A DNA stretch of 64,000 nt from Macrostomum lignano (Eukaryota): contig NIVC01001098.1 in assembly GCA_002269645.1 (NCBI GenBank), positions 62,001 through 126,000 on the forward strand, given 5' to 3'. A model generated the notes under the pieces. The model did not search any database. It saw only the letters and a list, made by a program, of their open reading frames with translations, and was not told the DNA's origin. Positions 23,806 through 63,512 of the stretch are shown here, in pieces. Every line of letters begins with the position of its first letter. The stretch's first letter is position 1. The translations under genes were made by a program, and so were the position numbers.

Positions 23806-23815
23806 TAGAAGAAGA

Positions 23816-27699: not shown

Positions 27700-28044
27700 T
27701 CTCAAGTGCCGGCGACCCTCCCCCAGCTGAAATGAAATACACTGCAGAGATAGGAGAAAAGTTGTGGCGCAACCATACAAAATAGCGTCAAGTGGGAAGT
27801 CCATGGAATGCGATATATAGACATCTGGTCTGGCTGTCTGGTTTGTGCTGTTTTCTGCTTTTTTGAAGCACTTAAAATTGAAATTTGAAAATGAATTTTA
27901 AATTGTAGCATCGTCGGGACATTTGACATGTTTTGGTACCGGTTTGAAAGTTGAGTTGCAAGAATCCTAGGAGGAGATCGTCGACAAACCCGGCCCACCG
28001 GCCCACCCTACCACCGGACCACGACGTCAGCTTTAGTATATAGA
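27700..28044 (-). mobile_element. Possible 5' end of another Helitron family (3' end not found)
   Basis: A|TCTATATACTAAAG at 28044 on the minus strand, matching the TC-TATATACTAAA start of the other elements. The left boundary is arbitrary. Confidence 0.4.
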
Positions 28045-42032: not shown

Positions 42033-43142
42033 ATGAGGCCGCTCCAAGCAACGCTGGCTGCAGTCCTGCTGCTGGCCTTCTGCGCCGGCTTCAATGCCGA
42101 ATCAATCATCGGAACCGTTCAAGTGATGTACTCCGGCTACAAGTTCAATGGCTTGAAGGTGAACGCCTCCGGAGTAAACGAGTCGAAAGAAATTCATCGA
42201 TTCCTCAGCATTCCATACGCTCAGCCGCCCACCGGAAACCGGCGGTTCGCCAAGCCCGAAGCGCTGGACTTCAGCAGAGACGTCGAAATCGATGCCTCAG
42301 AGCAGCCTCCGCTGTGCCCACAGGACAACTCCACCAAGAGCCTGCCGTACAGCGAGGACTGCCTGTACATGAACATCTGGTCGCCTGACACCACCTCGGG
42401 TACCAAGTACCCCGTGCTGGTCTACATCCACGGTGGACGCTTCGAGACTGGCGGCATCGCTGAGCCGGAGTACCAGGGCGAGACCCTTGTGCGAAATCAG
42501 AATATCGTCTTCGTGACCATCAACTACCGACTGGGCGCCACTGGCTTTCTCTACCTGGATTCGACACTGATGCCAGGTAACTTTGGCCTGCTGGATCAGC
42601 GCCTGGCTCTGAAGACGATCACTGATATGATAAGTGCTTTCGGCGGAGACCCGAACAGAATCACCCTGGCCGGCCACGGAACCGGCTCCGCTTCTGTCGG
42701 GTTCCACATCGCCACTCAAGATGTCCCGGTCACCCGTGCGGTGATGATGGGCGGCTCGCACCTCATGCCCCTGGTCTGGTCGAACGACATCGATGCAGTG
42801 AGGGGCGTTAGTGAGCGCTTCGCGAACATTCAGCTGAACTGCGCTCGTGGGGAGGGCAAGCTTCAAGAGGTGATCGAATGCCTGCGAAATGACATCTCCA
42901 TTGAGAGGCTGATCGAAGAGCAGAAGAACTACGAGAAGCTCTACATTTCGCTCGAGTTCATGCCCGTGCTGGACAAAGAGTTTTTTAACTTTATGGACCC
43001 GCTAATAACTTGGGGCGAGCGCCGTAAGAACGTCACTTTGCTGATGGGCGTCACCGCTGACTCCGGAATCGAGTTCGCCCTCAACTCGCTGCGCACTCGC
43101 AACCTCACCACCGACATCCTCAACCGCGATGTGTACTACGAG
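42033..43142 (+). CDS. Exon 1: signal peptide plus esterase-like domain 1 (type A), N-part
   Basis: ATG at 42033; donor GAG|GTGAGT, phase 0; nucleophile elbow GHGTG. Confidence 0.92.
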
Positions 43143-46100
43143 GTGAGTAGCTTTTCCTATGCTAGGCGAATGTCCCCGCGGATATTGTTCATCCGGCTAT
43201 CCAAGACCACCTGCTCTGTTGCAACAGTTGTTGCGACATTGAGCAAACTCAGCAGTTTTAAATTATTGATCGTTGTAGGACTGACTTTAGGCTCAATATA
43301 CTTAAATCCATGTACATTAAAAACCAGAAACCAAATCTGAACATTCAACTTTCTCACAGTGGTGCGGGCCATTTACTCAAGGTATTCTAAGTGAAGGCAC
43401 AACCCGATCATTGTACTCGCAATCTCTGCTCACTTACTCTGAACATTCTGCCCCTGATATGCCCTTGGACTGTACAGTAAACATTTGTTCTCTATTTATC
43501 TCTTATAAAAGTTGTTGCGTGAGTGAAAATACATCAGAACCTGAAGATGGCCCTTGTTGGACCGAAACGCTTTGGAAGAATTTAATCTAACCTAATCTAC
43601 GAGCTATGTTGATTTTCACATTTATTTTCAATTGTTCGTTTACTTGTAAATCAATAAGCCTCATCCTCACCCCGCCTTGCCCGTCCCGCCGCAGATCCTG
43701 CGCCAGCAGTTCGTGCACTACCCCCGCTTCCCCACCGAGCTGGACGACACCGGGCTGAAATTCCTCCAGCTGTCGCACACCGAGTGGAACGACGCCCAGA
43801 ACAAAGAGCTGCTGCTGAAAAAATGGTCCGAGGCTCTGGGCGACTTCAGCTTTCTCTGCCCGACCCTCTACGCCCTGTTCGATGATGACAGGCCGCAGCC
43901 GGGAGAGGACATGAACGCCTACCTGTACTACTTCGGTGCTCCGGACCCGTTTAGGGACAACGAGGCGCCCGGACACGTCAACGATGTGCGCTACTTCCTT
44001 GGCGTCCCGGACGGCCCTGGCCTCCCGTACCCGAGCGAGCACAACGAGCTGGCCAAGCGCATGATGGAGGATCTGGCCAACTTTGTCACCACCGGAAGGC
44101 CGAGTGAGGAAATTGTTTAGAATATGAATTTCAAAGGAAACAGCCCATTCCAGTAAATGTCAAATCCTCTAAGAATGAACTGAATTTCCTGCCATTCCTA
44201 CAGCAGTGGGTAATCCAACTCATACCCACTCTCATTGCCTCCTTTGCATTCTTATGATGAATTTTTCGCGGACTCTCAGCCCAGTCAAACCCAGCGCTAA
44301 ATGGCTACCCCGGGATTTCACACACAGACAACAACTGGCGCAGCGTGATCGCCGGGGACTGGAACTACAACAGCTACCTGCCGGTGCAGGACCCCGGCCT
44401 CTACGACTTAACTGGCGGCTTCGCCATCCGCCGCTGCCGCTGGTGGTACGACACCCTCAGCTTCGTGAACCGCCTCGTGCCGGGCGACTCTGCGAAGCCG
44501 ATGAGCCCGCTGCGGCAGGACCCGTTTCTGCTGGACGGCAGCACCATCGGTGCGGCGCCGGCCCGCTCGAAGCCGCAGCAAGAGGCTGCCGCCAACAATT
44601 TCCAGCCCACATCCGCGCAAATCATTGACAATGCCACTGTGGAGCTCACCGAGGTCGGCGCCACTGTCAGGGGGCACCGGCTCTCCGCGAACGCGAACGG
44701 GAAGGAGATTGAGCGATTCCTCGGCATTCCGTACGCGCAGCCGCCAACCGGCGATCTGCGATTCGCGAAGCCGGCTCTGAAGGACATTGCAAACGGTGAG
44801 TTACATTAAACATTGCAGCTGCAAGAAAAAGAGGCAGATCAAGGTTTTCGGTCCGAAAGTCAAACCCACAAGCAAAGATGAGAAAAAATATTCTGACAAT
44901 TCAGCAGAATAAGCCAGCTCATTTTTTTATAAAACAGTTTGCAGACTACAAAATTGCGCTTAGCCAAATCCAACGAAATTTCGTTACATCCAACGAAAGC
45001 CTTCTACTGCCAAAATGCTATTAAATAATTGCTAGCAATTATTTCCTATCTTCCTATATCTCATATTTCCCATATCTTCCTATCTCGCCATATCTCGAAA
45101 TTTGGAGGATTTTCATGTGTAGCGTCCCGCTGCTGCAGTTGTCCATGTACCTGTGCAATATGAACAGTTGTTCATGTACCTGTGCAATATTAACAGTTGT
45201 TCATGTACCTGTGCAATATTAACAGTTGTTCATGTACCTGTGCAATATGAACAGTTGTTCATGTACCTGTGCAATATGAACAGTTGTTCATGTACCTGTG
45301 CAATATTAACAGTTGTTCATGTACCTGTACAATATGAACAGTTGTTCATGTACCTGTGCAATATGAACAGTTGTTCATGTACCTGTGCAATATGAACAGT
45401 TGTTCATGTACCTGTGCAATATAAACAGTTGTTCATGTACCTGTGCAATATGAACAGTTGTTCATGTACCTGTGCAATATGAACAGTTGTTCATGTACCT
45501 GTGCAATATGAACAGTTGTTCATGTACCTGTGCAATATGAACAGTTGTTCATGTACCTGTGCAATATGAACAGTTTTTCATGTACCTGTGCAATATAAAC
45601 AGTTGTTCATGTACCTGTGCAATATGAACAGTTGTTCATGTACCTGTGCAATATTAACAGTTGTTCATGTGCCTGTGCAATATTAACAGTTGTTCATGTA
45701 CCTGTGCAATATGAACAGTTGTTCATGTACCTGTGCAATATTAACAGTTGTTCATGTACCTGTGCAATATGAACAGTTGTTCATGTACCTGTGCAATATG
45801 AACAGTTGTTCATGTACCTGTGCAATATGAACAGTTGTTCATGTACCTGTGCAATATTAACAGTTGTTCATGTACCTGTGCAATATTAACAGTTGTTCAT
45901 GTACCTGTGCAATATTAACAGTTGTTCATGTACCTGTGCAATATTAACAGTTGTTCATGTACCTGTGCAATATTAACAGGTGTTCATGTACCTGTGCAAT
46001 ATGAACAGTAGTTCATGTACCTGTGCAATATTAACAGTAGTTCATGTACCTGTGCAATATTAACAGTTGTTCATGTACCTGTGCAATATTAACAGTTGTT

Positions 46101-49100
46101 CATGTACCTGTGCAATATGAACAGTTGTTCATGTACCTGTGCAATATTAATCAAGGACCACTAGCAGTATATATACTCAGCAACATCGAAAAGTCGCCAT
46201 CACAGATCCGTCTGTGATCGCCGCTTTTGAGAGTGCAGGTAGTCTCTCAATCTTTGCGAGTGACGCAACTTAAATACGCCGCGGCAGACTTGAGTTGAGA
46301 AATGAAGTGGGGGAGCTGTGTGCGAGGGTTGGACGGATTAAAGCTACCCCGATGAGTTTTCTCGCATCTTTTATTTCAGAATGGTCCAAGAGAAATTGCT
46401 CACTGACGCATAGAGTGGCGACTTTTCAATGTTGCTGAGTCTTAGAACATGAAATGTAACATGAAATGTATAAAGAACATGAATGTTCTTAGAACATTTG
46501 AATTTTGCTCCAATGTTAGAAAAATTTCAAGCGCGCAGCGACACAAACTCAGCTGGCCCGCAGGCATAAAAACCCTTCGAGAGAGGGGGGTGGGCGCAAG
46601 CCGGGGGGTTGGCGGTGTACACAAAACCCGGTTAGTGCTGGCAGCACAAACCAGTTCAGAAGGTCTGTGCAGAGGACGGCGTGTGGCTGAGGCTGACTCA
46701 AGCCAGACAACTGTCTCAGTCTGCCTGCGCGAGGTTTGACCCCCACTTTTAGTGTGTCACAAGACACCTTCAAAACAGAAAAATTCGTCGAAATAAATTT
46801 CTTAGGAAAAATCACAAATAAAAATCACAATACCAACAACTTGTAAAGCCGCATTGGATAAAAGCATGCTGGCTTCAATTAATTTATCACCGGTAGTATG
46901 GAAGGTACGCTCGTAGTTTTGGGCTACAGGCTCTTAATGACTCCATCATTAGTTTGAAATGGCCCTGGGTCTTCAAGTAAATTTATTAAAGCCTTTCGAT
47001 TTACGCTCAAAACAGAAAAATGCACTTTTAGATTTTATCAGCGACCTCAAATGTCAGAATCTTCCAGATAGTTCCGACTTCTGCCCCTTCTGCAAGCTGT
47101 AGAAGTCCTTTCCTCAATTCCAAAAGCACTCCTGTTGAGCATCGCATAATTCTTATTTCTTCAATTTACTTTGCAGCTACCATCGATGCGCAAACGATGC
47201 CTAAGGCGTGTCCGCAGGCGTGGAATACGACCTTGGAAGAGGACGAGGACTGCCTCTACCTCAACATCTGGACTCCGAGACCTAGCCTGACAGCCAATGA
47301 GTCTCAGCAGGTCCCCGTACTGGTGTACTTTCACGGTGGCTTCTTCGAAGTCGGAGGCATCAACGATCCGTACCGGAGTGGCGAGAAGATTGTCGAGCTG
47401 CAGGACGTCGTCGTGGTTACCATCGGCTACCGACTGGGAGTTCTAGGATTCCTGCCCTTCTCGGCCGAGGGCAGCCGCGGAAACTTTGGCCTCTTCGATC
47501 AGGAGATGGCGCTCAAATGGGTGGAGGCGAATATTCACCACTTCGGTGGCAACGCCAGTCTCATCACCGCCGTGGGCGACGACGCCGGAGCCGTGTCCAT
47601 TGGCTACCACCTGATCCGCAACGAGACCCGGATCTCCAGGGTGATTCTCCAGACGGGCAGTCCGTCTATGGCCTATCCCCTGAACAACGACACCGATGGC
47701 ACCCGCATGCGCATCGAACAATACCTGCAGCTAATGGGATGCAACAACAGCACCACGGACGCCCAGTTGGCTTGCATGCGGGCCAAGTCCGTGTCGGATA
47801 TCAACAGTGTCTACACTAACGAGTTCGCCAACAAGTTCGGTCCGGAGGCCCTGGTCACAGTCGACGGAGACTTTCTCAAGGAGGACCCGTGGCATTCGGT
47901 GCAGCAGGGCGACATGTCCCAGGTGCCCATGATCGTCGGATTTGTCGACAGGCCGGGAAATGAGATCATCAACCGCAGGATTCGCTTCGGCGAGCTGGAC
48001 TTGGCAAACATTTCTTATGACGAAGTGCTGCAGGTAAGCCTCTAAAATATGTGGGTGAGTTTTATAAGTACTCGTAGATGAATAATTCACTATGCAACCA
48101 TAAACACTTGCAGAACATCGTTAACGCATCATACTACAACCCGAGGCTACCTAAGGAGCTGAAGCAGCCCGGAGCCACGCTGATCGGGATGCAATACCGA
48201 CCGCCGCTTCTGCATAGGCAGGTGCTGATTGACAGCCTTAGTGAGGCCTATAGTGACCGTTTCTACACCTGCGGAAACAACGAATACCTGCAGCAAGTGA
48301 TCTCTAAGCGGCATCCGCTTGATGCATTCCTGTATCACTATGTGTTCTCCGAGAAGTCCAATGTTGAAAATATTACATCCGATGGAGCAAGCTTGTGTAG
48401 GTGCCATTTTATTGCATTTTTATTAGTAGCCGATAAAAAATCAATCCAAAAAAGCCAAATAAATCAATATATATACACAAATCTACTCTACAGCCGAGGA
48501 CACCTTCTATCTCTTCGGAAATCCTTTGCAAGGACCTGAGTGGAACGATGAACAGAAGAGTCTGTCTGAAAAGATGATCGAATTATTCACGCACTTCGCC
48601 GAGACAGGAAATCCCAATCCTGAAAACAGTCTCGACCTGTGGTGGGAGTACACAGCAAATCTAAAGCCCTACCTTGTGCTCGATGCGCAGGTGCACAATG
48701 TGTCGGTAAATTGGGGCTTCCGGATTAACGACTGCGGATTCTGGCAGGAGGTTCTTCCCTACGTCAATGAGCTGAAGGAGCCGCCGGAACCAACCAGGCC
48801 TCCGATCGGACCAGAGGGAGAAATTATCGATGAAATCATCATTGAAATCGACCTCGGAAGAACGCAAAACAGGATCAGCATCGCCGGAGACTTGGTGCGA
48901 CTGCCAAACGGAAAGATCATCAAGCGATTCCTGGGTCTGCCCTACGCGGAAATGCCACTCACTCGGTGGAGCCAGGCTTCATTTCCGAAGGGTGGCAACT
49001 ACACAGCGAAGTCTATGCCACCAGCCTGTCCGCAAACCATCAATCCAGTTCCGGGAGGAAGCATGTCAGAGGATTGTCTGTACATAAACGTATTTTTTCC

Positions 49101-52100: not shown

Positions 52101-55100
52101 GGAGTGGACCGACCTGGAAACACGTTTATCGAAAGACTGGTGGACACTGAGATCCTTGTGCCAGAGAACTTTAGTCATAACGCGTACTTAACGGTGAGTA
52201 ATTATCTTTAAAGTTTTATGCAATCTGAAAATTCAATTGTGTCAGGAATTTCACTCACGTATTTTTTACCTATAAAGACAACATTTATCAAAGTTTTCTT
52301 ACGTACGAGCTATCATTAAATAAAAAGTAATGGATGCCCTTAAATAGCTCGTACTCATAATGTTAATATTTTTTGCTCAGGACGTCTCAAAAACCGCACA
52401 CTTTAATTCAATCCAAAAGAACAAGTCGGTACTCTGAACTTTTAGATTCTGCAAAGCATGAACGAATTCTTCCCGAGATACCCCAAGAGCATGACTGTGT
52501 CCGGGCGGACGGGCCTGCGCAACCACTTCATGCAGTACAACGGACAGGGCAATTTTGAGCGGGATCTCAGAGACCTAGGACTAGCGCTCAGCGATCGCTA
52601 CTTCACCTGCGCGAATAACAAGTTCCTTGATGCGTACTCCAAAGCCTCGAGCAAGCCTGTTTACAATTATCTGTTCACTGAGGGCAAGGAATACAAGGGA
52701 GACACAGAGCTTCCCCTGCAGCATGCAAGTCTTTGTGAGTCGAAAGCTGCAGTATTGATTTTCGTTTTCTCTCACAGCATTTTAAAGTCAAACTGCTTAA
52801 GCTCGTAAACTTAAAAGCTTAAGAATCTGCAACACTTATTAATTTTTCCCTTTCAGTCGAGGACGCATTCTATGTGTTCGGCAATCCCTCCAGCCCCGGT
52901 CCAATTGTGCCAGACCAACAGCGGCGGCTGTCCGACGCCATCATGCACGCCATCGTTCAGTTTGCTCGAACCGGCCGTCCATCTGACCTTTTGAAATGGG
53001 ACCCGTACGACTCTGAGAAGAAGTCACATCTGCTGCTCGACGCCGACCATCTCCCTCCGACGATGTATCCTGATGGGTACAGGAGACAGGAGTGCGGCTT
53101 CTGGGACCACACTTTACCGTTCGTCGACAGCCTGAACGACACTGCGCCGCCGCCGACCAGACCTCCGATCGGTCCCGATGGCGGCATTATTGAGGAAATC
53201 ATCATTGAAATCGACCTCGGAAGAACGCAAAACAGGATCAGCATCGCCGGAGACTTGGTGCGACTGCCAAACGGAAAGATCATCAAGCGATTCCTGGGTC
53301 TGCCCTACGCGGAAATGCCACTCACTCGGTGGAGCCAGGCTTCATTACCAAAGGGTGGCAACTACACAGCAAAGACAATGCCACCGGCCTGTCCACAAAC
53401 CATCAATCCAGTTCCGGGAGGAAGCATGTCTGAGGATTGTCTGTACCTGAACATTTGGGCACCGCGCGACACGTCCAGAAGTTATCCAACAGCAGTGTTC
53501 CTGCATGGCGGCAACTACACGAGTGGAGCTAACAGTCTGCCAGAGTATCGAGGTGAGCAGCTTCTCGAGAACGAGGACGTTATTCTCATCACGGTCAACT
53601 ACCGACTGGGCGCGCTCGGCTTCCTGTTCCTGGACGACGAGAAGCTGCCCGGAAACTTCGGTCTGATGGACCAACGGCTCGCTCTCGACTTCATCCAAAG
53701 AGTGATTCCCTTTTTTGGAGGCAGCAGGACGCAGATCACTCTGATGGGTCACGGGACGGACGCCGCGTCGGCCGGCTTCCATGCTGTCACGGATTCGAAG
53801 GACTTCTTCGACCGGATGATCTTGATGGGCGGATCTCCGTCGATGCCGCTGGCTTGGTCGAGCTCGACCCAAGAGGTTCTCGAAGATAGCGAGCATTTTG
53901 TCAATGTTCAACTAGACTGTGCAAGAGGCCCACTTGATTCGGTTTTGGAATGTCTGAGAAACCTTACATTGGATAAGATCATGACGGAACAGCTGAACAT
54001 GCAGCACTCGAGAGATCACTTGGTATTCCTGCCCGTGTTCAACCAGTCGTTTTTTAACCACACCCATCCATATGATCGCTGGTGGAATGGCGAGATGAAC
54101 AAGCCGTACATGACAGGCGTGGGCTCAGACTCTGGTCGCTACTACATCGAGCAGTCGCTGGCTCGACGGAACATCTCCTGGGAGTCGCTGAACCGAACTA
54201 TTTTCGAAAGGGTAAGCAACTGACCATACTTCTGTTTCACTATAAAAAGTGAAACAGCTTGCACTATAAAATCCAAAAATCCTTTATTAAACGAAAGAAG
54301 CATCGATGCCATGCCTTTTCTTGAATACCTTTCAGATCGTGGAGCTGCAGTTTAACTACTTCCCCCGCTTCCCGGAGAGGAACACGGCTACCGGAATTCA
54401 ATTCCTCAAGCTGGCCCTCACTGAGTGGAACTACTACGACTACAACGAGCGTATCAAAGCCATCTGGTCCAGGGCGATGGGTGACTTTAACTTTCTGTGC
54501 CCCATCTGGGAGGCCACGAGCGACCTACTGAGGGCCAAGCAGCACGATATTCACATGTACTACATAGATGTGGAGGACCCGTTCAGGGCGCAAGAGGGTT
54601 TGATCGGCGCTGACCACTGGGGCGACATCCGCTACCTGTTTGGCGAGCCTATGAGGCGAGACGGATATCCGGAGGTTCATAAGGATCTGTCCCGACTGAT
54701 GATGGACGACTTTGTTCAGTATATTGGTGGATCAGGTGAGCTTTCCTAGGATCAATAAATGGTTTTTTTACTGTTTTTTGGTGCTTCATTTTTTTCTTGC
54801 TCTAAAACTCTGTTTTTTCTTTAGCTCCTGCCCGCTGGAACCGAACGAGCTTCCAAAACTCAGACTTCCTGCTGTACGACGTTGTTCTGCCAGACTCAGG
54901 CGGTGCTGGAAACGTGATCTCAGTCATGGTTGGCGACGGCTTCGGTCTAAACAGTGGCCGCTGCCCAGTCTGGAAGAATGAGCTGCCCTACGTGAACACG
55001 CTAGTCCCGACTACGACAGCAAGCGAGGAAGAAAACTTTGTCAAACTGCTCTCTAGCAGTGGCGAGCGGCCGGCCAGGACACCCAACTTGCAGCCTCAAC

Positions 55101-58100
55101 GCGCCACACCGTTCAATGTGCACGAAGTCATTGCGAATTACACTATTCAGGTTCCTGACTTCGGGCACGTTCGTGGACACACCATAAGAACAATCTCAAA
55201 TGTCACAATGTCTCACTTCCTTGGAATTCCGTTCGCACAGCCGCCCGTAGGAAATCTTCGGTTGGCTAAGCCGGATAAGCCCTCCACTACATCAGGTGGG
55301 ATTTCAAGCCTTTATTATGGTTTATAAATAATCAAGCGTGTAGGTTTACAGACTGTCTAATTCTAAAATTATTTTTCAGATACACAGCACATTGCACAAC
55401 AGATGCCGCCAGCTTGTATGCAGATGCAGAATTACAATTTCACAATGTCCGAAGACTGCCTCTATCTCAACGTCTGGACTCCAAAACGAGAGGGTAGAGA
55501 TGTCACCAATCTGCCTGTGCTAGTTTTCCTTCACGGAGGTTTCTTTGAAGTTGGAAGCGTTGGCGAAGATCGCTGGCAGGGAAGCATGATCTTGGATCAC
55601 CAGGACGCAGTCGTGGTTACCATCAACTATCGTTTAGGTGTGTTTGGCTTCCTGTCACTCGACAACAAGGAGGTGATCGGAAACTACGGTCTGTGGGATC
55701 AGGAGATGGCTTTGCAGTGGGTGGCCGATAACATTGAGAGCTTCGGCGGCAACAAGAACCGCATCACCCTGATGGGCGTGGAGGCTGGCGCCGTGTCGAT
55801 CGGTTACCACATGGCCAGGCCAGGGCAGAACCGGTTTCACCAGGTCGTCCTCATGACCGGCTCTCCGTACATGTCCTACCCGCTGACGAACGATACTGAG
55901 GAGGCGCGAGAGTTGCAAGTGACCTTTGTTCGAACCAGGCTCCGCTGCCAGGGGGCTGAGCTGCTGTCTTGCATTCGCGGCCTGTCCGCCAATGAGATTA
56001 ATGAGCAGCAGGGAGTGTTCCAACAGTTGTTCCAACGAATTGAGTTTCCACCAGTGGTCGATGGTGATTTCATTACAAGTGATCCTTGGACTGTAAACCC
56101 GAGCTCACTGATGCAGGTGCCCATGATCTTTGGTGGAGTAGACCGACCCGGAAATTTCCTTCTGGAGAGAGCCACTGACGGTCTTCTTTTGACACCGAGG
56201 AACTTCACTCATAATGTTTATCTCCAGGTTTGTACTTGACTTGAGCTTAACCATATTAATTATCATTATTTTGTGATCTGTAACTTTCGAATTTTCTTTC
56301 TGTTTTTCAGACTCTACAGCGCATGACCGAGTATTTTCCGCGGTTTCCGAAGTCAATGACGACTGCCGGCAGAAATGGCCTGCGCAACCACTTCAGGCAG
56401 TACAACGGACAGGACAATTTCGAGCGTGATATCAGAGACCTGGGCCTCGCCATCAGTGACCGCTACTATACATGCGCTAACAACAAGTTCCTTGACGCCT
56501 ACTCCAAGGCTTCCAGCCAGCCAGTCTACAACTATCTGTTCACAGAAGGGAAGGAATATGAGGAGTCAGAACTTCCACTGCTGCACGCTAGCCTTTGTGA
56601 GTTGAACCTTCGGATTATAAAGCGTATGAATGCATTTTAGATATTTACTATTGTGGTATCTTCAAGAGTGTTAATTTCCCAAAACCAAAATAAAAAATGT
56701 AATCGTACATTAGAAAAATCTACAAGAAAGTACTTTTATTATAGAATACTAAAAAATACATATAAACTCTGCTAATTTCAAATTTTCGATGTTTAATTAT
56801 TTCTATTAAAACTGATACCGGGTAAAGAAGTTTAAATTTTCGAGCTCAAATTCTCTTGCACGTCCATAAATTAATTTTAGTCGAGGACGCGTTCTACGTG
56901 TTTGGCAATCCGTCAAGCCCTGGCCCTGCACGACCTGATGAGCAGCGCGAGCTGTCTGACGAAATTATGCGGTCGATCGTCAATTTTGCTAGAAACGGCG
57001 AGCCTGGCGGCGGGATCCCTTGGGAACGGTACGACGCGTCCAACAAATCGCATCTGCTCCTGGATGCTGACAACCTACCACCAAGGATGTACAAGGACGG
57101 CTACAGGCGACAGCAGTGCGGATTCTGGGACGAGATACTGCCGTATGTGAACAGCTTGAATGACACGGGCACCACGCCGCCACCAACTGCACCACCAACG
57201 CGGCCTCCAATCGGACCAGACGGCACAGTTGTCGGAAATGCCACGGCTTCCATCACTCCTGACCTTTCCATCGTCGGACATCGCGTTCTCACACCAAACG
57301 GAATGAAGAACATCTCTCGATTTCTGGGCGTGCCGTATGCGGAACCTCCTGTCGGAGACCTCCGATTTGCTCCGCCGAGAGCTATTCCCAATAGTCCGGG
57401 CAAATTCATTGCGCAAACGCTGCCTCACGCCTGCCCACAAGACAATCGCACTCTTGGTGTAGCATACTCTGAAGACTGTCTGTACCTAAACATCTGGACG
57501 CCCGATGCAGTTCAAGGACGCAACTACCCAGTGATCGTTTACCTTCACGGCGGGAACTTTGAATCCGGCTCCATCAGTCAGCGCGAACTGTTCGGTGAGA
57601 ATCTTCTCTCGTACGAGGATGTTGTTCTAGTCACTGTGGCCTACCGGCTGGGCGCATTCGGCTTCCTATATCTTAGCGATAGCGAGCTTCCTGGAAACAT
57701 GGGTTTGTTGGATCAGCGTCTGGCGTTGAACGAGGTGAAGAGGTACATCAGCATGTTCGGTGGAGACCCCGAGAACATTGCACTAGCTGGCCACGGCATC
57801 GGAGCAGCAGCCGTTGGATTCCACAGCATCACCGCATCGAAGCAGAATTTCAAGCGAGCGATCATGATGGGTGGCTCGCCAACAATACCAATGGCCTGGT
57901 ACGACAGCAACGGAGGCAAGGAAAACACCCGAGAGCTGAACCTTGCATTCGTGTCCCTCGCGCTTGGCTGCCCAAGTACTACTATCTCCGAGGCCATCAC
58001 CTGCCTTAAAACCCTGGATACTAAAAATATTGTGGACGCGCAAACTCCATTCTTGCAGCTACTTCTCACTCTAGAGTTTAGACCTGTGCTGGATAGTGCC

Positions 58101-61100
58101 TTCTTCAACAACCGCGACCCACTTGAGGCTTGGAGGCACCAGGAGCAAGGCTCGTCAAACACTGAAATGCTAATGGGATTCACAACTGACACCGGTGGAA
58201 GCTATGTGGAACAAGCCCTGGTGAACCAGAATCTAACCCTCGCTGACATTGATACAGAAACCTACAAGGAGGTAGAGTAATTTTGACCAAATTTTTGTGC
58301 GTTTTCTACAAATACCAAACGTTTAAAATTAATGATTGGAATCGTACTTCATTTTCAGCTTCTCAACCGAACTTTCCCTTACCACCCGCGATTCCCTCGC
58401 AAACTGAGCGAAACTGGCACGGACTTTATCAATCTGTACTTCGACGACTACATCGGCAGTCCCGACAAGCAGACTCTGCTTAACACCTGGGGCCAGGCAG
58501 TCGGAGATCGCTATTTCCTTTGCCCTGTGTGGGAGACAATCGTGCAGAAGGGCCGGAACCAGACTAGCACTGAGACCTACCTGTACGTGTTTACTGCTCG
58601 AGACCCATGGGATACTGACCGAATGCAACTGGGCTCAGACCATCAGGCCGATCTGCGCTACTTCTTTGGCATTCCGGCGGGCACTGGCATCGCCTACCCA
58701 GAATCGCACAGAAACCTTTCCGTTCGCATGATGCGCGACATTGTCAAGTTCGTAAAGGACGGCAAGCCAAGTGAGTAAAAAGGACAAACTTTCTTAAAAA
58801 GTAATTTTCATGGATAGGTAAATAAGGCAAACTACGCACCAAACATTTTAGACCCATCCTGGCAGACAACAAAACTCGGAGTATGGGACTACGCCGACTA
58901 CAACAACCTCTATAGTGATCGCTACAATGCCACCGAAGGAGCCAGCACTATTCAACGCTGCGGAGTCTGGTACTATGATCTGCCGTATGTCGATGGCCTG
59001 GTGAAAAGTGCAAAGAAGTCGCCCGAACCACTGCGACGAAAGTCCGCGCTGTCTCTGCCTGACGTGACCACCAATGAGGCTCCCAAATCTGACAGCATCA
59101 TCCCGAGAAGAACGAGGACTGCAATTCGGAACTATAATGTCTCAGTAAGCGGCTATGGCACAGTTGTTGGAAGCACAGTGCTGACCACGGACAATAACAC
59201 AATATCGGAGTTTTTGGGTGTGCGATACGCCCAGCCACCGTTGGGAGATCTGCGTTTTAAGAAGCCCGAGCCGTTGAGGGACGCTGGTGATGGTAAGTCA
59301 GTTTTGCGTTACTACGAGCTAATGGAGTATTTGCTTAGACAATTAACTAATCAATCTTGTACTGATGCTTAGGTGTGACTCATCTGGCACTGGAAATGGG
59401 ACTTCCATGCTATCAAAGGAATTACTACAATTTCGCGAACATGAGCGAAGATTGCCTCACTCTAAATATCTGGACACCAAGAACCGAAAGCAACCCTAGC
59501 GGCACGTACCCGGTGATTGTGTTCATTCACGGTGGCTTCTTTGAAGTTGGATCCTCGGCGGAATCACGCTGGAACGGAGAGAATATCCTGGACCACGAGC
59601 AAGCTGTGATCGTTACAATCAACTATCGACTCGGCGCCTTTGGCTTCTTGGCTCTGAATAGCTCGATGGCCAGCGGCATTACCGGAAATATGGGCTTGTT
59701 CGACCAGGAGGCTGCCATCAGCTGGGTGGCGAAGAACATTGAAGCATTCGGTGGCGACAAGAATGCCATCACACTGGCGGGAGCTGAGGCCGGCTCCATC
59801 TCTGTTGGATACCACCTCCTCAGAGAACCGACTGCAAACAAGCCGTTCCACCGAGTCATCATGATGACTGGCAGCCCGATCCAAAGCTACCCGCTCAGCG
59901 ACAAGCCAGACTTTGTGAAGCAGTACCATGCCGAGTTCGTCAGGACTTTGAACTGCAGCTCTGATGTGGTCAACTGCCTGCAGTCTCTCTCAGCCGACGT
60001 TATTAACGAGAAGCAGGAAGATTTCAACCAGATTTTCACGGGCATTGAGTTCCAGCCCATCATTGACAATGACTTCTTTACCGCTGACCCATGGGTTCTC
60101 GTCCGGGATGGCAAATTTGCGAAGATGCCGATGATCATCGGCCAGACCAGCAGCCCAGGAAACTTCCTGCTGGAGCGCATTGTAGGCAACATTATTTTGA
60201 ACAAGGAGAACTTTACTCTGGAAACGTACCGACAGGTAACTGTCACTTTGATACTGACTACTTGGCTTCGAAAATTTGCTTTGTTGCTACCAAAATAATA
60301 AATAAAATATTCCCGATTTCCGCATAACCTCAGGCCCTGGTCGAGTCCAACACTTTCTTCCCAAGGTTCCCGACTCAAATGACAACCAGCGGACAGGAGG
60401 CTCTCAAACTATTCAAATCCCCATGGGCAAACCTGGAAAGCTTCGAGCTCAAGATTCGCGAGTGGGCGGAGGCGCTGAGCGACCGCTATTTCACTTGCGA
60501 CATCACCGAGTTTACCGAGAAGTTTGTCGAGAAAAACCCTACCAACTCCACTTATTACTATCTGTTTGACGAGAAGGCTCTGTTCCAAGGGGAAAGCCTG
60601 CCCCTGTTGGGCGCGACGCTGTGTAAGTTACAATGAGTTTTTTCCCATTGCGAATCGCCAGGTCTTTGCACTACTAGACCAAGCTAGCACAACCCGTCTG
60701 ATATTTCCAGTCGAAGACGCCTTCTTCTTCTTCGGAAATCCAACAAGCCCGGGCCCTGCCGAAACCGTTGAGAGAGCCAACCTCTCTGAATCCATCATGA
60801 GGCGCTTCGTCAAGTTTGCCAGGGACGGAAACCCGAATGCCAATCCCAGCTCCCCTACCTGGAGGCCATACGAGCTGGGCTTCAAGAAGACCAAGTACTT
60901 CCGGGCTCTCGGCATTGACAGGTTCCCAGAGCTGAACTTTGGCTTCCGCAGGCAGGACTGCGGCTGGTGGGAGAAAGTCCTGCCCTATGTTGACGATCTG
61001 GTCTACCCTGCGACTACAACTGCTACGAGTCCGACGGCCACACCGACGACGACCTCGACAACTGCACCGCCGACTACGACCATCTCAGCCACTAGTCCGA

Positions 61101-61516
61101 CTACGATCACCTCGACCAGTACTTCGGCTACGACCACCACAATGACTCCAGAGCCGACAACGATGACCACTCAGGCGCCGAGCAGCAGCACGAGGCCACC
61201 GATCGGTCCCCAGGACAGCCCAGACTCTGGCTTCTACGCTCTTGTTACCGTGATCCCGATCCTTGGCGTTGCCCTGATCGGTCTCGCCATCTTTGTGGTC
61301 GTTAAGGTGGTGATGGGCGCTAGCTCTGTGGTGGCTCCCACCGCCGCTGCAGCCGGAGGCGGCGCAGCAGCCTTTGGAGCGGCCGAGGCCGGCACTGCAG
61401 CTGCCCCCGCCTCCGCTGCTCCAGCCTCCGCCGAGAACCCAACCAGCGCAGAGGTGGTCAACGAGGCCTACGAGGCAGACGGGGCCGATGGAGAGGAAGG
61501 CTCAACGGACCTGTAG
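42033..61516 (+). CDS. Giant type I membrane protein (~4,700 aa, 21 exons) with 8 tandem catalytically inactive carboxylesterase/cholinesterase-like domains
   Basis: Signal peptide MRPLQATLAAVLLLAFCAGFNA. Eight repeats of FLG(I/V)PYA.PP / SEDCLY(L/M)N / HGG / NYRLG..GFL / GNxGLxDQ (slightly varied in some domains). All 20 predicted introns are GT-AG and phase-consistent. CDS sums to 14,103 nt with exon 3 starting at 44280. TM at 61232-61303; ends STDL-stop. Confidence 0.88.
43695..44103 (+). CDS. Exon 2: domain 1, C-part
   Basis: CAG|ATC acceptor; A|GTGAG donor, phase 1; contains GHVNDVRY. Confidence 0.88.
44280..44795 (+). CDS. Exon 3: end of domain 1, linker, start of domain 2 (acceptor could be 44328)
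   Basis: In-frame through CRWWYDTL to FLGIPYAQPP; donor G|GTGAGT, phase 1. Confidence 0.8.
45137..46150. repeat. 29-bp minisatellite (AACAGTTGTTCATGTACCTGTGCAATATG) in intron 3
   Basis: About 35 near-perfect copies. Confidence 0.97.
46175..46440. mobile_element. Probable MITE in intron 3 (25-bp TIRs)
   Basis: ACTCAGCAACATCGAAAAGTCGCCA vs TGGCGACTTTTCAATGTTGCTGAGT (24/25 inverted); no clear TSD. Confidence 0.6.
47177..48033 (+). CDS. Exon 4: domain 2 (type B) core
   Basis: TTGCAG|CT acceptor, CAG|GTAAGC donor; elbow GDDAG. Confidence 0.9.
48114..48396 (+). CDS. Exon 5: domain 2
   Basis: CAG|AAC acceptor; T|GTAGGT donor, phase 1, at the same position as in exons 10, 15 and 20. Confidence 0.85.
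48494..49848 (+). CDS. Exon 6: end of domain 2, PTRPPIGP linker, domain 3 (type A)
   Basis: A single open frame crosses the domain boundary; elbow GHGTD; AGG|GTAAGA donor. Confidence 0.92.
49944..50343 (+). CDS. Exon 7: domain 3, C-part
   Basis: CCAG|ATC acceptor, CAG|GTGAGA donor; contains GADHWGDIRY. Confidence 0.9.
50778..51248 (+). CDS. Exon 8: end of domain 3, linker, start of domain 4
   Basis: TTGCAG|CA acceptor in phase; CAG|GTGCAC donor. Confidence 0.85.
51343..52193 (+). CDS. Exon 9: domain 4 (type B) core
   Basis: Elbow GVEAG; ACG|GTGAGT donor. Confidence 0.9.
52446..52734 (+). CDS. Exon 10: domain 4
   Basis: TTTAG|ATT acceptor; T|GTGAGT donor. Confidence 0.87.
52857..54211 (+). 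CDS. Exon 11: end of domain 4, linker, domain 5 (type A)
   Basis: Single frame; elbow GHGTD; same length (1355 nt) as exon 6. Confidence 0.92.
54336..54735 (+). CDS. Exon 12: domain 5, C-part
   Basis: 400 nt like exon 7; contains GADHWGDIRY. Confidence 0.9.
54825..55295 (+). CDS. Exon 13: end of domain 5, linker, start of domain 6
   Basis: 471 nt like exon 8; TTTAG|CT acceptor, CAG|GTGGGA donor. Confidence 0.86.
55380..56227 (+). CDS. Exon 14: domain 6 (type B) core
   Basis: Elbow GVEAG; CAG|GTTTGT donor. Confidence 0.9.
56311..56596 (+). CDS. Exon 15: domain 6
   Basis: TTCAG|ACT acceptor; T|GTGAGT donor. Confidence 0.87.
56881..58271 (+). CDS. Exon 16: end of domain 6, linker, domain 7 (type A)
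   Basis: Single frame; elbow GHGIG; GAG|GTAGAG donor. Confidence 0.9.
58359..58770 (+). CDS. Exon 17: domain 7, C-part
   Basis: Contains GSDHQADLRY; A|GTGAGT donor. Confidence 0.88.
58852..59292 (+). CDS. Exon 18: end of domain 7, linker, start of domain 8
   Basis: TTTAG|AC acceptor in phase; G|GTAAGT donor. Confidence 0.85.
59373..60235 (+). CDS. Exon 19: domain 8 (type B) core
   Basis: Elbow GAEAG; CAG|GTAACT donor. Confidence 0.9.
60334..60622 (+). CDS. Exon 20: domain 8
   Basis: CTCAG|GCC acceptor; T|GTAAGT donor. Confidence 0.87.
60711..61516 (+). CDS. Exon 21: end of domain 8, Thr-rich stalk, TM helix, cytoplasmic tail
   Basis: CGWWEKVLPY, T-rich stretch, FYALVTVIPILGVALIGLAIFVVV, tail ending EEGSTDL-stop. 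Confidence 0.92.
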
Positions 61517-62439: not shown

Positions 62440-62625
62440 GCAGCAGTCAGCAGTCAGCAGCACGCAGTCAGCAGCACTTAGTCAGCAGCAGTCGGTCAGC
62501 AGTCAGCAGTCAGCAGCACTCAGTCAGCAGTCAGCAGTCAGCAGTCAGCAGTCAGCAGTCAGCAGCAGGTAGCAGCAGTCAGCAGTCAGCAGTCAGCAGC
62601 ACTTAGTCAGCAGCAGTCGGTCAGC
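62440..62625. repeat. (CAGCAGT)n-type microsatellite
   Basis: Imperfect 7-bp repeat at the end of the MFS-like ORF. Confidence 0.9.
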
Positions 62626-63297
62626 AGTCGTTGTCATTTGGCATTTGTCGAATCAGAAGCAGCAGAACGCTCAGCTGAGCGGCTGCCAGCAGTAGCAGCA
62701 GGCGGAGGAGTATCCGCTGATCTTGCAGGCTGGCGCCGCCAATCGGCAGGGCCTGACGAACCTCCAGCTCGACGGCGATGGCCAACCCGCCAGCCAGCCG
62801 GCTGAAGGCGTAAACGGACCGCGCCGGGACGCCAGTAGCAGCCTCTCCGGCGGCATAGGCGCAGCTGCCGATGCCGCCGATGCCGAAGCCACCTGCCCAG
62901 GCCAGCAGCAGCTCGGCGTTGCGGAGCCGGCTCGAGCCGAGGACGGCTGACCAGCCGAGGAGGGAGCAGCCGGTCAGCAGCGCTGAGGCCGCGTGGCCAA
63001 TCAGAAGCCGCCGGCCAGGCAGCAGGCAGCCGATCACCGCGCCGCTCAGGTAGGAGGCCGTGGAGCCCGCCGAAAACAGCAACGCCGGCAAGGCGCCGTC
63101 GGCCGACAGCAGCTGCTGCGGAGGGGCGGGCCTCGAGCCTGCGAACTCGGCGGAGTGGCGAGCAGCGCCAGAACGGACGAGCAGGAACTGGAAGACGCCA
63201 TCGGAGACCAGAGAGGCCAGCAGCCGTTCGAGCAGCCACAGCAACACGGTGCGGCTCGAGCTGAGTTCGAACTGATTGTGGACGATGAGGGAGGAGC
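62621..63297 (-). CDS. Last coding exon of a probable MFS-type (monocarboxylate-transporter-like) membrane protein
   Basis: Several Gly-rich hydrophobic helices (LLFSAGSTASYLSGAVIG, WAGGFGIGGIG, LLLLLAAAQLSVLLLL); candidate acceptor TGTAG|GC at 63297. Confidence 0.55.
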
Positions 63298-63512
63298 CTA
63301 CAGACACGCAGTGCAGCCGAGGACAAAATATGTTTATCTATTTAGAGGAGTTCAGAAAAGCTGGATTGCTGGAGTCGCGAATGATCTCAGCACTATCGAA
63401 TCCTTAAACGGCAAACACCCAGAACCAACGTGAGCACATGGAGTACTTAAATATTTTCATTTTATACTTTAGTCAGACATAATTATAGTCACAGAGCGCT
63501 GCAATTAATCAC

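What the first reader, a model, noticed from the sequence alone, without database searches (positions are those of the whole stretch)
42033..61516. Giant eight-domain pseudo-cholinesterase membrane protein: a 'poly-neuroligin'-like architecture
The sequence shows one signal peptide, eight esterase-fold domains, one TM helix and a single stop. Exons 3, 6, 8, 11, 13, 16 and 18 each read in one frame across a domain boundary with no stop or new signal peptide, so this is one ~4,700-aa polypeptide rather than a gene cluster. The residue at the GxSxG nucleophile position is G (42678), D (47581), G (49390), E (51744), G (53753), E (55781), G (57795) and E (59786), never Ser. The triad Glu position also appears lost, while the HGG oxyanion loop and the SEDCL cysteine are kept. 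Established cholinesterase-like adhesion molecules (neuroligin, gliotactin, neurotactin, glutactin) have ONE such domain; I know of no described eight-domain form. By inference it is a very long adhesion, junction or ligand-scavenging surface protein.
Basis: partly seen in the sequence, partly recalled or inferred. Interest (0 to 1): 0.92.

Follow-up and report, generated by a model that had tools for sequence, protein, structure and literature searches.

The report
Eight-domain dead-cholinesterase membrane protein
A flatworm (Macrostomum lignano) gene encodes one 4,700-residue cell-surface protein made of eight catalytically dead cholinesterase-like domains in a row, twice as many as in any other protein found in the searches here; it is already in GenBank as an unnamed, shortened "hypothetical protein" and nobody has studied its function.

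Summary
Window 42033-61516 (+) holds a 21-exon, all GT-AG gene. Its CDS is 14,103 nt (4,700 aa): signal peptide, eight Pfam COesterase domains, a Ser/Thr/Pro stalk, one TM helix and a 67-aa tail.

The triad Glu is lost in all eight domains. The triad His survives only in the odd domains.

The domains alternate as two types, (A-B)x4.

The window is M. lignano contig NIVC01001098.1. The gene is already annotated from RNA-seq as BOX15_Mlig018316g1 (PAA72303.1, "hypothetical protein", 3,558 aa). That CDS lacks exactly one A-B unit, and the break abuts a 150-nt tract identical between exons 9 and 14, so it is probably a transcript-assembly collapse.

A second genomic copy keeps all 21 exons and the intact ORF. 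dN/dS between the copies is 0.12, and 0.05 for the "missing" unit.

Multi-COesterase membrane proteins with two to four domains are predicted in sea stars, sea urchins, acorn worms, a tunicate and a nemertean. None is characterised, and none has more than four domains.

Verdict: a real gene, and a new multi-domain variant of the non-catalytic cholinesterase-like surface proteins. Its function is only inferred.

The parts
42033..61516 (+). Whole coding span of the gene: ATG to TAG, 21 exons, 14,103-nt CDS, 4,700 aa. It is the GenBank gene BOX15_Mlig018316g1 on NIVC01001098.1.
   Evidence: L001 positions 10001-29484 are identical to window 42033-61516.
42033..43142 (+). Exon 1: signal peptide plus the N-terminal two thirds of domain 1.
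   Evidence: Donor GTGAGT. Conserved in the second copy.
43695..44103 (+). Exon 2: middle of domain 1.
44280..44795 (+). Exon 3: end of domain 1, the A-to-B linker and the start of domain 2. The GenBank CDS uses a later acceptor and lacks aa 507-523.
47177..48033 (+). Exon 4: core of domain 2.
48114..48396 (+). Exon 5: middle of domain 2.
48494..49848 (+). Exon 6: end of domain 2, the TRPPIGP linker and the N-terminal two thirds of domain 3.
49944..50343 (+). Exon 7: middle of domain 3.
50778..51248 (+). Exon 8: end of domain 3, linker and start of domain 4.
51343..52193 (+). Exon 9: core of domain 4.
52446..52734 (+). Exon 10: middle of domain 4.
52857..54211 (+). Exon 11: end of domain 4, the TRPPIGP linker and the N-terminal two thirds of domain 5.
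54336..54735 (+). Exon 12: middle of domain 5.
54825..55295 (+). Exon 13: end of domain 5, linker and start of domain 6.
55380..56227 (+). Exon 14: core of domain 6.
56311..56596 (+). Exon 15: middle of domain 6.
56881..58271 (+). Exon 16: end of domain 6, the TRPPIGP linker and the N-terminal two thirds of domain 7.
58359..58770 (+). Exon 17: middle of domain 7.
58852..59292 (+). Exon 18: end of domain 7, linker and start of domain 8.
59373..60235 (+). Exon 19: core of domain 8.
60334..60622 (+). Exon 20: middle of domain 8.
60711..61516 (+). Exon 21: end of domain 8, stalk, TM helix, tail and stop.
42033..42098 (+). Signal peptide, aa 1-22 (MRPLQATLAAVLLLAFCAGFNA).
   Evidence: Hydrophobicity scan. 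It is the only such segment apart from the TM helix.
42099..44467 (+). Domain 1, type A, aa 23-569. The Ser position is G216 (42678), the Glu position is S344 (43062), and His464 is kept (43974).
44516..48765 (+). Domain 2, type B, aa 586-1149. Ser is replaced by D814 (47581), Glu by P938 (47953) and His by L1058 (48393).
48805..50947 (+). Domain 3, type A, aa 1163-1700. Ser is replaced by G1358 (49390) and Glu by S1484 (49768); His1604 is kept (50223).
51065..53125 (+). Domain 4, type B, aa 1740-2270. Ser is replaced by E1935 (51744), Glu by P2058 (52113) and His by L2180 (52731).
53168..54994 (+). Domain 5, type A, aa 2285-2822. Ser is replaced by G2480 (53753) and Glu by S2606 (54131); His2726 is kept (54615).
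55112..57149 (+). Domain 6, type B, aa 2862-3390. Ser is replaced by E3057 (55781), Glu by P3179 (56147) and His by L3300 (56593).
57201..58991 (+). Domain 7, type A, aa 3408-3948. Ser is replaced by G3606 (57795) and Glu by T3738 (58191); His3859 is kept (58641).
59115..60991 (+). Domain 8, type B, aa 3990-4526. Ser is replaced by E4187 (59786), Glu by P4310 (60155) and His by L4432 (60619).
60992..61231 (+). Mucin-like stalk, aa 4527-4606. A 76-residue sample of it is 72% Ser, Thr or Pro. It ends in TRPPIGP, the motif that also follows domains 2, 4 and 6.
61232..61312 (+). The single transmembrane helix, aa 4607-4633.
   Evidence: Kyte-Doolittle 19-residue window score of 2.83, the highest in the protein.
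61313..61513 (+). Cytoplasmic tail, 67 aa, rich in Ala, Gly and Glu. It ends in -STDL, which fits the class I PDZ-ligand consensus S/T-x-hydrophobic (motif match only).
   Evidence: The PDZ consensus comes from general knowledge and was not tested.
51636..51785 (+). A 150-nt tract in exon 9 that is 100% identical to 55673-55822 in exon 14. The break in the GenBank 3,558-aa CDS lies at its edge; 51635|55673 is the only GT-AG-compatible junction.
55673..55822 (+). The partner of the identical tract, in exon 14. This is a gene-conversion tract inside exons that are otherwise about 74% identical.
45136..46147 (.). A 29-bp tandem repeat of 35 copies inside intron 3, the only long intron (2,381 nt).
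   Evidence: The length differs between the genomic copies.

Best explanation
This is one expressed gene of the flatworm Macrostomum lignano. It encodes a 4,700-residue type I membrane glycoprotein.

The order of parts is: signal peptide, four tandem copies of a two-domain unit (A-B), a Ser/Thr/Pro-rich stalk, one TM helix, and a short acidic tail ending in -STDL. Each A and B is a complete cholinesterase-fold domain with its three disulfides.

No domain can work as a serine hydrolase. A domains have Gly at the nucleophile and Ser or Thr at the acid position; only the His is kept. B domains have Asp or Glu at the nucleophile, Pro at the acid position and Leu at the His position.

The array grew by in-frame tandem duplication of the whole ectodomain unit of an ancestral one-unit A-B membrane protein. 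Paralogues of that one-unit form still exist in the same genome. The duplication of units 2 and 3 is the most recent, and part of it has been homogenised by gene conversion.

Inferred, not shown: the protein acts as a non-enzymatic binding, adhesion or spacer molecule of the cell surface, like the single-domain cholinesterase-like adhesion molecules, but it projects much farther from the membrane.

My confidence is about 0.85-0.9 in the architecture and the loss of catalysis, and about 0.4 in the adhesion or scaffold role.
For: Gene structure and domains:
- The gene model has uniform GT-AG introns and the intron-phase pattern [0,1,1,0,1] repeated four times.
- Pfam gives eight COesterase matches.
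- Mapping against AChE shows the triad changes.
- There are 49 Cys: one in the signal peptide and six per domain, at the three cholinesterase disulfide positions.
- All 64 N-x-S/T sequons lie in the ectodomain.
- There is one signal peptide and one TM helix.

Expression and constraint:
- The GenBank gene PAA72303.1 has the same start and stop, and comes from an annotation built only from RNA-seq.
- The second genomic copy (NIVC01000581.1) keeps all 21 exons, their splice sites and a 14,100-nt ORF.
- dN/dS between the copies is 0.12 overall and 0.05-0.24 per domain.
- Exons are 98.3% identical with one in-frame indel. Introns are 94.7% identical with 532 gap columns.
- Within the gene, dN/dS is 0.20 for D3/D5 and 0.17 for D4/D6.

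Origin:
- The one-unit paralogues PAA79323.1 and PAA79327.1 have signal peptide, A (GHG...), B (GAEAG), stalk and TM.
- Their B domains are the closest relatives of this gene's B domains, and their A domains the closest relatives of its A domains.
- TRPPIGP follows every B domain and also sits just before the TM helix.
Against: - No full-length 8-domain transcript is on record. The only transcript-based CDS has six domains.
- I found no expression pattern, localisation or phenotype; four supplement searches were empty.
- No binding partner is known.
- The closest sequence relatives are active cholinesterases, not known adhesion molecules.
- The structure prediction of a paralogous A-B pair gave no usable inter-domain geometry, because the A domain scored pLDDT below 50.
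- The PDZ-type C-terminus and the O-glycosylated stalk are motif or composition matches only.
Confidence: 0.72

Rival explanations
1. The real product has six domains (3,558 aa, as in GenBank). On this view one A-B unit (aa 1889-3010) is removed by splicing from inside exon 9 to inside exon 14, or the expressed allele carries only three units.
For: The RNA-seq-based CDS PAA72303.1, and the copy PAA80450.1, both lack exactly this unit. One GT-AG-compatible junction exists at 51635|55673.
Against: - The junction sits at the edge of a 150-nt tract identical in exons 9 and 14. Short-read and de novo assemblies collapse at such tracts.
- The would-be acceptor has no pyrimidine tract.
- The skipped unit differs between the two genomic copies at 65 synonymous against 12 non-synonymous sites, giving dN/dS of 0.05 and no frame damage.
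- An independent assembly's gene model (A0A1I8G704) contains pieces specific to domains 5 and 6.
Confidence: 0.15
2. It is a shed or membrane-tethered ligand sponge, or a storage or precursor protein, rather than an adhesion molecule. On this view the dead active-site gorges bind small molecules or peptides without turnover, in the way BChE scavenges toxins, or the protein acts like thyroglobulin.
For: The oxyanion-loop HGG and the gorge-lining framework are kept in all eight domains. The A-to-B linkers carry basic clusters (SRKRP, RPAR, RRTR) that could be convertase sites. The ectodomain is far longer than a junctional cleft; this is inferred from the domain count.
Against: Covalent scavenging needs the missing Ser. 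The TM helix, the stalk and the PDZ-type C-terminus point to a retained surface protein. There are no Tg-type repeats or any other Pfam domains.
Confidence: 0.15
3. Some domains are still enzymes that use unusual residues. Examples would be Asp or Glu at the nucleophile elbow of B domains, as in dehalogenases and epoxide hydrolases, or the His-Gly elbow plus the retained His in A domains.
For: An acidic residue sits at the nucleophile position of all four B domains. A His precedes the elbow Gly and the triad His is kept in all four A domains. Both patterns are conserved in the paralogues.
Against: B domains lack both the His (Leu) and the acid (Pro). A domains have no nucleophile side chain and no acid. 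So no domain has even two compatible triad members in place.
Confidence: 0.05
4. It is an artefact: either a cluster of separate esterase genes wrongly read as one, or an assembly duplication or pseudogene.
For: Many multi-COesterase database entries are fusions of tandem genes, each with its own signal peptide (Lineus XP_064631732.1, and the Ostrea and Venturia models). The M. lignano assembly is highly redundant.
Against: - There is no internal signal peptide or stop, and seven exons span domain boundaries.
- The units are 30-47% identical apart from D3/D5 and D4/D6, and those differ mainly at synonymous sites.
- Two genomic copies keep the whole ORF under purifying selection.
- The RNA-seq annotation makes a single gene.
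Confidence: 0.03

Closest known systems
Neuroligins (cholinesterase-like adhesion molecules, CLAMs)
   Same: Both are type I membrane proteins with an extracellular cholinesterase-fold domain that lacks the catalytic Ser. According to general knowledge of neuroligins, they have Gly there, as do the A domains here. Both have a Ser/Thr/Pro-rich stalk, one TM helix and a short tail with an S/T-x-hydrophobic C-terminus.
   Different: This protein has eight domains instead of one, of two alternating types. Its best sequence matches are AChE/BChE: no neuroligin is among the 120 best database hits or the 60 best PDB chains. Nothing here bears on neurexin binding. The ectodomain is inferred to be too long for a synaptic cleft.
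Gliotactin, neurotactin and glutactin (insect CLAMs)
   Same: All are non-catalytic cholinesterase-like domains used as extracellular binding modules in junctions or basement membrane (general knowledge; glutactin in bioRxiv 10.1101/2022.11.30.518525, listed).
   Different: Each has a single domain. Neurotactin is type II and glutactin is secreted. Orthology was not tested directly, and nothing among the best hits points to them.
Acetylcholinesterase / butyrylcholinesterase
   Same: These are the closest relatives by sequence (E 1e-60 to 1e-68, about 30% identity). They share the three disulfides, the HGG loop and SEDCLYLN. The modelled B domain of a paralogue superposes on them with a target-normalised TM-score of about 0.82.
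   Different: The catalytic triad is destroyed in all eight domains. This protein is multi-domain and has a TM anchor instead of a tetramerisation or GPI tail.
M. lignano one-unit paralogues PAA79323.1 / PAA79327.1 (BOX15_Mlig025559g3, Mlig007046g1) and A0A1I8I8B3
   Same: They share the A (GHG elbow) then B (G-x-E-A-G elbow) didomain. The two GenBank paralogues also have the Thr/Pro stalk and a single TM helix. They are the nearest relatives of the respective domain types.
   Different: They have one A-B unit instead of four. Their A domain is more degenerate, with HGG lost. The tails differ.
Predicted multi-COesterase type I membrane proteins of other phyla
   Same: Each has one signal peptide, two to four COesterase domains in a single frame, a stalk and a C-terminal TM helix. 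At least the membrane-proximal domain lacks Ser. Examples: Styela clava XP_077968891.1 (4 domains); Acanthaster XP_022079595.1, Saccoglossus XP_006825066.1, Glandiceps XP_077983973.1 and Diadema XP_071500051.1 (2 domains each); Lineus XP_064622620.1 (2 domains, elbows G and D). All are 'uncharacterized'.
   Different: They have at most four domains. In the deuterostome proteins, apart from Diadema (elbows G and G), the outer domains keep Ser. The origins appear independent: the two Lineus domains are each other's best match, and beyond M. lignano the flatworm domains match ordinary cholinesterases best.
Thyroglobulin
   Same: It is a very large secretory-pathway protein with a non-catalytic cholinesterase-like domain (general knowledge; PMC13078365 was listed but I did not read it).
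   Different: It has one C-terminal ChEL domain preceded by Tg repeats, and it is secreted. Here Pfam finds only alpha/beta-hydrolase-fold models: COesterase plus the overlapping BD-FAE and Abhydrolase_3.

Membership tests
Carboxylesterase type B / cholinesterase fold (Pfam PF00135) | Significant match to the family profile over the whole ~515-position model | tested here: met
   Eight stretches, 2,691.8 bits, E = 0; the best stretch covers model positions 5-515.
Carboxylesterase type B / cholinesterase fold (Pfam PF00135) | Three conserved intradomain disulfide pairs | tested here: met
   Six Cys per domain at the aligned AChE positions; 48 in total plus one in the signal peptide.
Active cholinesterases / carboxylesterases | Ser-Glu-His catalytic triad | tested here: not met
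   Ser is replaced by G/D/G/E/G/E/G/E and Glu by S/P/S/P/S/P/T/P. His is kept only in domains 1, 3, 5 and 7.
Cholinesterase-like adhesion molecules (CLAMs) | Cholinesterase-fold domain without the catalytic Ser, exposed extracellularly | tested here: met
   Triad loss. N-terminal signal peptide, C-terminal TM helix and 64 N-glycosylation sequons in the ectodomain. The topology is predicted, not measured.
Cholinesterase-like adhesion molecules (CLAMs) | A single cholinesterase-like domain per polypeptide | tested here: not met
   Eight domains.
Cholinesterase-like adhesion molecules (CLAMs) | Demonstrated heterophilic binding or cell adhesion | not testable with these tools
   Needs binding or cell-aggregation assays.
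Neuroligins | Closest sequence relatives are neuroligins (orthology) | tested here: not met
   The 120 best database hits and the 60 best PDB chains for both domain types are AChE, BChE or carboxylesterases; none is a neuroligin. No explicit tree with neuroligins was built.
Neuroligins | Stalk, single TM helix, and a tail with a PDZ-binding C-terminus | tested here: inconclusive
   A stalk sample is 72% Ser/Thr/Pro, there is one TM helix, and the C-terminus is -STDL. These are matches of composition and motif only.
Neuroligins | Binds neurexin LNS domains | not testable with these tools
Flatworm A-B didomain membrane pseudo-esterases (defined here, not a published family) | A domain (G-H-G elbow, His kept) followed by B domain (acidic elbow, His lost), then stalk and TM helix | tested here: met
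   There are four such units here. The one-unit paralogues share the order and the elbows and are reciprocal nearest relatives by domain type.
Thyroglobulin | Tg type-1/2/3 repeats upstream of one ChEL domain | tested here: not met
   Pfam finds only COesterase and the overlapping alpha/beta-hydrolase models.

The most novel reading that the evidence does not exclude
The gene is the extreme member of an unrecognised class of 'poly-cholinesterase-like' type I membrane pseudoenzymes that arose several times in invertebrates: flatworm, nemertean, echinoderms, hemichordates and a tunicate. In this reading, each A-B pair folds back into an intramolecular pseudo-dimer that mimics the four-helix-bundle dimer of AChE and neuroligin. 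The result would be a rigid rod of four beads that holds membranes or matrix tens of nanometres apart, or presents several binding sites. That would be a new way to build a giant surface receptor from an enzyme fold.
Probability: 0.25. Interest if true: 0.7.

Novelty: new variant of a known kind. Interest (0 to 1): 0.52.

Why it matters
Cholinesterase-like adhesion molecules, such as neuroligins, are textbook examples of an enzyme fold recruited for cell contact. As far as my searches show, every described member has a single such domain.

This gene shows that the fold can be strung into an eight-domain, 4,700-residue receptor that is kept under strong purifying selection. Unnamed proteins with two to four domains are also predicted in several other phyla.

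M. lignano supports RNAi, in situ hybridisation and transgenesis (PMC5730564; general knowledge). The function of a multi-domain CLAM could therefore be tested directly.

There is also a practical point. The public CDS (3,558 aa) probably lacks 1,122 residues because a repeat was collapsed in the transcript assembly.

Tried and rejected
- **Spliced protein as search query.** I used an alignment of the three boundary-spanning exons instead.
- **Word-indexed homology searches with single exons.** These returned only short proteins and missed the gene's own long models. Every listed hit was shorter than about 1.75 times the query. A full-length query then retrieved PAA72303.1.
- **AlphaFold2 of the paralogous A-B protein A0A1I8I8B3.** I used 60 sequences, including exon pieces from the window. 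The B domain was confident (pLDDT above 90) and the A domain was not (below 50). The idea of an intramolecular A:B pseudo-dimer therefore could not be assessed. Foldseek only confirmed the AChE/BChE fold of B.
- **Literature searches.** I searched for multi-domain cholinesterase-like proteins, for M. lignano esterases and for 'Mlig018316'. Nothing relevant turned up.
- **Supplement searches of four M. lignano expression papers for Mlig018316.** There were no occurrences, so no expression data.
- **Deep homology between the flatworm A-B unit and the two-domain proteins of echinoderms, hemichordates and Lineus.** Rejected: the domain-level BLAST shows no cross-phylum pairing.
- **Assembly duplication of units 2 and 3.** Rejected: they are 74-90% identical at the DNA level, and both units are present in a second contig.
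- **Other COesterase genes in the window.** None.

Full report
**What is in the sequence**

The + strand between 42033 and 61516 contains long open stretches that match Pfam COesterase piecewise. I joined them using splice-site consensus, frame continuity and the paralogous exon boundaries.

The result is a 21-exon model in which every intron is GT...AG. The CDS is 14,103 nt, giving 4,700 aa and one stop. Intron phases repeat as [0,1,1,0,1] four times.

The whole protein gives eight COesterase matches (2,691.8 bits, E = 0). tblastn finds no further copy elsewhere in the window.

Only two segments are hydrophobic enough for a signal peptide or a TM helix: aa 1-22 and aa 4607-4633. The protein has 49 Cys, one in the signal peptide and six per domain at the three cholinesterase disulfide positions. 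All 64 N-x-S/T sequons lie before the TM helix.

Between domain 8 and the TM helix lies a Ser/Thr/Pro-rich stalk of about 80 residues. The 67-residue tail ends in -STDL.

**Catalytic residues**

I aligned the eight domains with fish, frog and abalone AChE and mapped the positions back to the genome.

| Domain | Type | Ser position (codon start) | Glu position | His position |
|---|---|---|---|---|
| 1 | A | G216 (42678) | S | kept |
| 2 | B | D814 (47581) | P | Leu |
| 3 | A | G1358 (49390) | S | kept |
| 4 | B | E1935 (51744) | P | Leu |
| 5 | A | G2480 (53753) | S | kept |
| 6 | B | E3057 (55781) | P | Leu |
| 7 | A | G3606 (57795) | T | kept |
| 8 | B | E4187 (59786) | P | Leu |

HGG and (S/D)EDCL are kept in all eight domains. 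No domain has a workable triad.

**Two domain types and how the array arose**

Odd domains (type A, elbow G-H-G) are 39-43% identical to each other. Even domains (type B, elbow G-x-[DE]-A-G) are 37-47% identical to each other. A and B are 30-36% identical. The protein is therefore (A-B)x4.

A-to-B linkers are roughly 40-60 residues. B-to-A linkers are roughly 15-20 residues and contain TRPPIGP. The same motif sits just before the TM helix. This suggests that the whole ectodomain, up to the juxtamembrane motif, was duplicated in frame.

Units 2 and 3 are the youngest pair. D3/D5 are 91% identical (dS 0.28, dN/dS 0.20) and D4/D6 are 72% identical (dS 1.26, dN/dS 0.17). A 150-nt tract is 100% identical between exon 9 and exon 14, which indicates gene conversion.

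**Source organism and existing annotation**

A 304-aa UniProt entry from Macrostomum lignano is a scrambled model of this locus.

A full-length query retrieved PAA72303.1 (BOX15_Mlig018316g1, UniProt A0A267FF20, 'hypothetical protein', 3,558 aa). Its gene span on NIVC01001098.1 is base-for-base window 42033-61516.

According to the genome paper, that annotation was built only from RNA-seq. It used StringTie and TACO plus a mapped de novo transcriptome, and gene ends were set by trans-splice and poly(A) signals (PMC5730564). This is transcript-level support for one gene running from the signal peptide to the TM helix.

The GenBank CDS equals my model minus three pieces:
- aa 507-523, through an alternative acceptor in exon 3;
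- aa 1467-1470;
- aa 1889-3010, which is exactly one A-B unit.

The break of the large gap lies at the edge of the 150-nt identical tract. The only GT-AG-compatible placement is 51635|55673, and that acceptor has no pyrimidine tract. I read this as a repeat collapse in the transcript assembly. A genuine 6-domain isoform or allele is not excluded.

**Independent genomic copy**

The assembly holds two more copies: g3 on NIVC01000581.1, and g2 on NIVC01003818.1, which is cut by the end of its contig.

The g3 locus is collinear over the whole gene. It keeps all 21 exons with their splice dinucleotides and an intact 14,100-nt ORF.

Comparison of g1 with g3:
- There are 176.5 synonymous and 70.5 non-synonymous differences (dS 0.056, dN 0.0065, dN/dS 0.12).
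- Every domain has dN/dS of 0.05-0.24.
- The unit missing from the GenBank CDS has 65 synonymous against 12 non-synonymous differences (dN/dS 0.05).
- Exons are 98.3% identical with one 3-nt indel. Introns are 94.7% identical with 532 gap columns.

An independent assembly's model (A0A1I8G704, 3,380 aa) also strings domains 1 to 8 and includes pieces specific to domains 5 and 6.

Together these results exclude a gene cluster, a pseudogene and an assembly duplication. They make the eight-domain reading the most likely product.

**Relatives**

A profile of the three exons that span a B-to-A boundary was run against 1.84 billion representative proteins. Of the best 150 hits, 64 are 900 aa or longer and about 50 have at least two COesterase domains.

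Some of these are fusions of tandem genes, each with its own signal peptide: Lineus XP_064631732.1 and the Ostrea and Venturia models.

About a dozen have one signal peptide and one C-terminal TM helix. These include:
- Styela clava XP_077968891.1, with four domains (elbows S, S, S, G);
- two-domain proteins of Acanthaster, Saccoglossus, Glandiceps and Diadema, in which the membrane-proximal domain has Gly or Lys at the elbow and the outer domain has Ser, except in Diadema (Gly);
- Lineus XP_064622620.1, with elbows G and D;
- the M. lignano one-unit paralogues PAA79323.1 and PAA79327.1, with A-B, stalk and TM.

All are unnamed, and none outside M. lignano has more than four domains.

Domain-level BLAST pairs this gene's B domains with the paralogues' B domains (33-38% for PAA79323, 38-43% for A0A1I8I8B3; domain 2 only 32%). 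It pairs the paralogues' A domains with this gene's A domains. The two Lineus domains match each other best, and no cross-phylum pairing appears. The multi-domain state therefore seems to have arisen more than once.

By sequence, both domain types are nearest to AChE/BChE (E 1e-60 to 1e-68). No neuroligin appears among the best 60 PDB chains or the 120 best database hits.

**How it probably works**

Shown:
- The protein has the sequence hallmarks of a secretory-pathway, single-pass membrane glycoprotein.
- Its entire large ectodomain consists of eight folded cholinesterase-type domains, each of which has lost the Ser and Glu of the triad.
- It is conserved as a coding sequence.

Inferred:
- Like the single-domain cholinesterase-like adhesion molecules, it uses the fold as a binding surface rather than a catalyst.
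- With eight domains of about 60 kDa each plus a mucin-like stalk, it should reach several tens of nanometres from the membrane. That fits a surface coat, a matrix link, a spacer or a multivalent receptor better than a narrow synaptic or septate cleft.
- The -STDL end fits a class I PDZ ligand, as in neuroligins, which hints at a cortical scaffold.

I tried to test whether A and B pair as an intramolecular pseudo-dimer. I modelled a paralogous A-B protein, but the A domain came out with pLDDT below 50, so nothing can be said.

**Novelty and limits**

Five literature searches and one search for the gene identifier found no description of any multi-domain cholinesterase-like protein or of this gene. 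Four supplement searches gave no expression data.

The gene itself is already in GenBank and UniProt as an unnamed, probably truncated model. The finding is therefore a new variant of a known kind, not a new kind of system.

The decisive checks are read coverage of the unit-3-specific exons in existing RNA-seq, a long-read cDNA, and localisation and RNAi in the animal.

Noticed in passing
window 42033-61516 versus GenBank PAA72303.1: The public CDS of this gene (3,558 aa) lacks 1,122 residues, one whole A-B unit. The break lies at the edge of a 150-nt tract identical in exons 9 and 14. The same gap is copied into the annotation of the second locus (PAA80450.1). This is probably a repeat collapse in the transcript assembly.
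   Followed up: yes
window 51636-51785 and 55673-55822: A tract of 150 nt with perfect identity sits inside exons that are otherwise about 74% identical. This is a gene-conversion tract between domains 4 and 6.
   Followed up: yes
window 6354-10805: A young LTR retrotransposon. Its LTRs of about 270 nt (6354-6624 and 10536-10805) are 98-100% identical. They flank an intact 1,202-aa ORF (6859-10464) with aspartyl protease, reverse transcriptase, RNase H and integrase domains.
   Followed up: partly
window 38373-39745, minus strand: Two overlapping ORFs match DUF3504 and QRICH1, with a weak match to Phage_integrase. This looks like a Crypton-type tyrosine-recombinase-derived sequence whose frame is broken.
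   Followed up: no
window 1-2062, 11418-11761, 13229-14767, 16003-19116, 24169-26133: Large satellite arrays. One is a 48-bp unit in 43 copies at the window start. There are several 23-bp arrays, and the unit at 24169-26133 is the reverse complement of the unit at 13229-14767. About a sixth of the window is satellite.
   Followed up: no
window 45136-46147 (intron 3 of the gene): A 29-bp tandem repeat of 35 copies. Intron 3 is 2,381 nt here but 1,628 nt in the second genomic copy, so the array length varies between copies.
   Followed up: partly
protein aa 1701-1760, 2823-2880, 3949-4010 (window 50948-51125, 54995-55166, 58992-59175): The A-to-B linkers of units 2, 3 and 4 carry basic clusters (SRKRP, RPAR, RRTR) that resemble minimal proprotein-convertase sites. 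The ectodomain might therefore be cleaved into pieces.
   Followed up: no
window 62441-63430: A GC-rich region downstream of the gene holds a CAGCAGT heptamer repeat (62441-62629) that reads as SAVSSQQ repeats. It also holds ORFs on both strands with no Pfam match. This may be another gene.
   Followed up: no
loci L002 (NIVC01000581.1) and L003 (NIVC01003818.1): The assembly carries three copies of this 20-kb gene at 95-99% identity. That fits the recent genome duplication reported for M. lignano (PMC5730564; PMC10733133 abstract). Both full-length copies are intact.
   Followed up: yes
database proteins P0122, P0134, P0135, P0138, P0143, P0147, P0148: Unnamed type I membrane proteins with two to four COesterase domains in a tunicate, sea stars, sea urchins, acorn worms and a nemertean. 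In most of the deuterostome proteins the outer domain keeps the catalytic Ser and the membrane-proximal one has lost it. I found no description of this pattern.
   Followed up: partly
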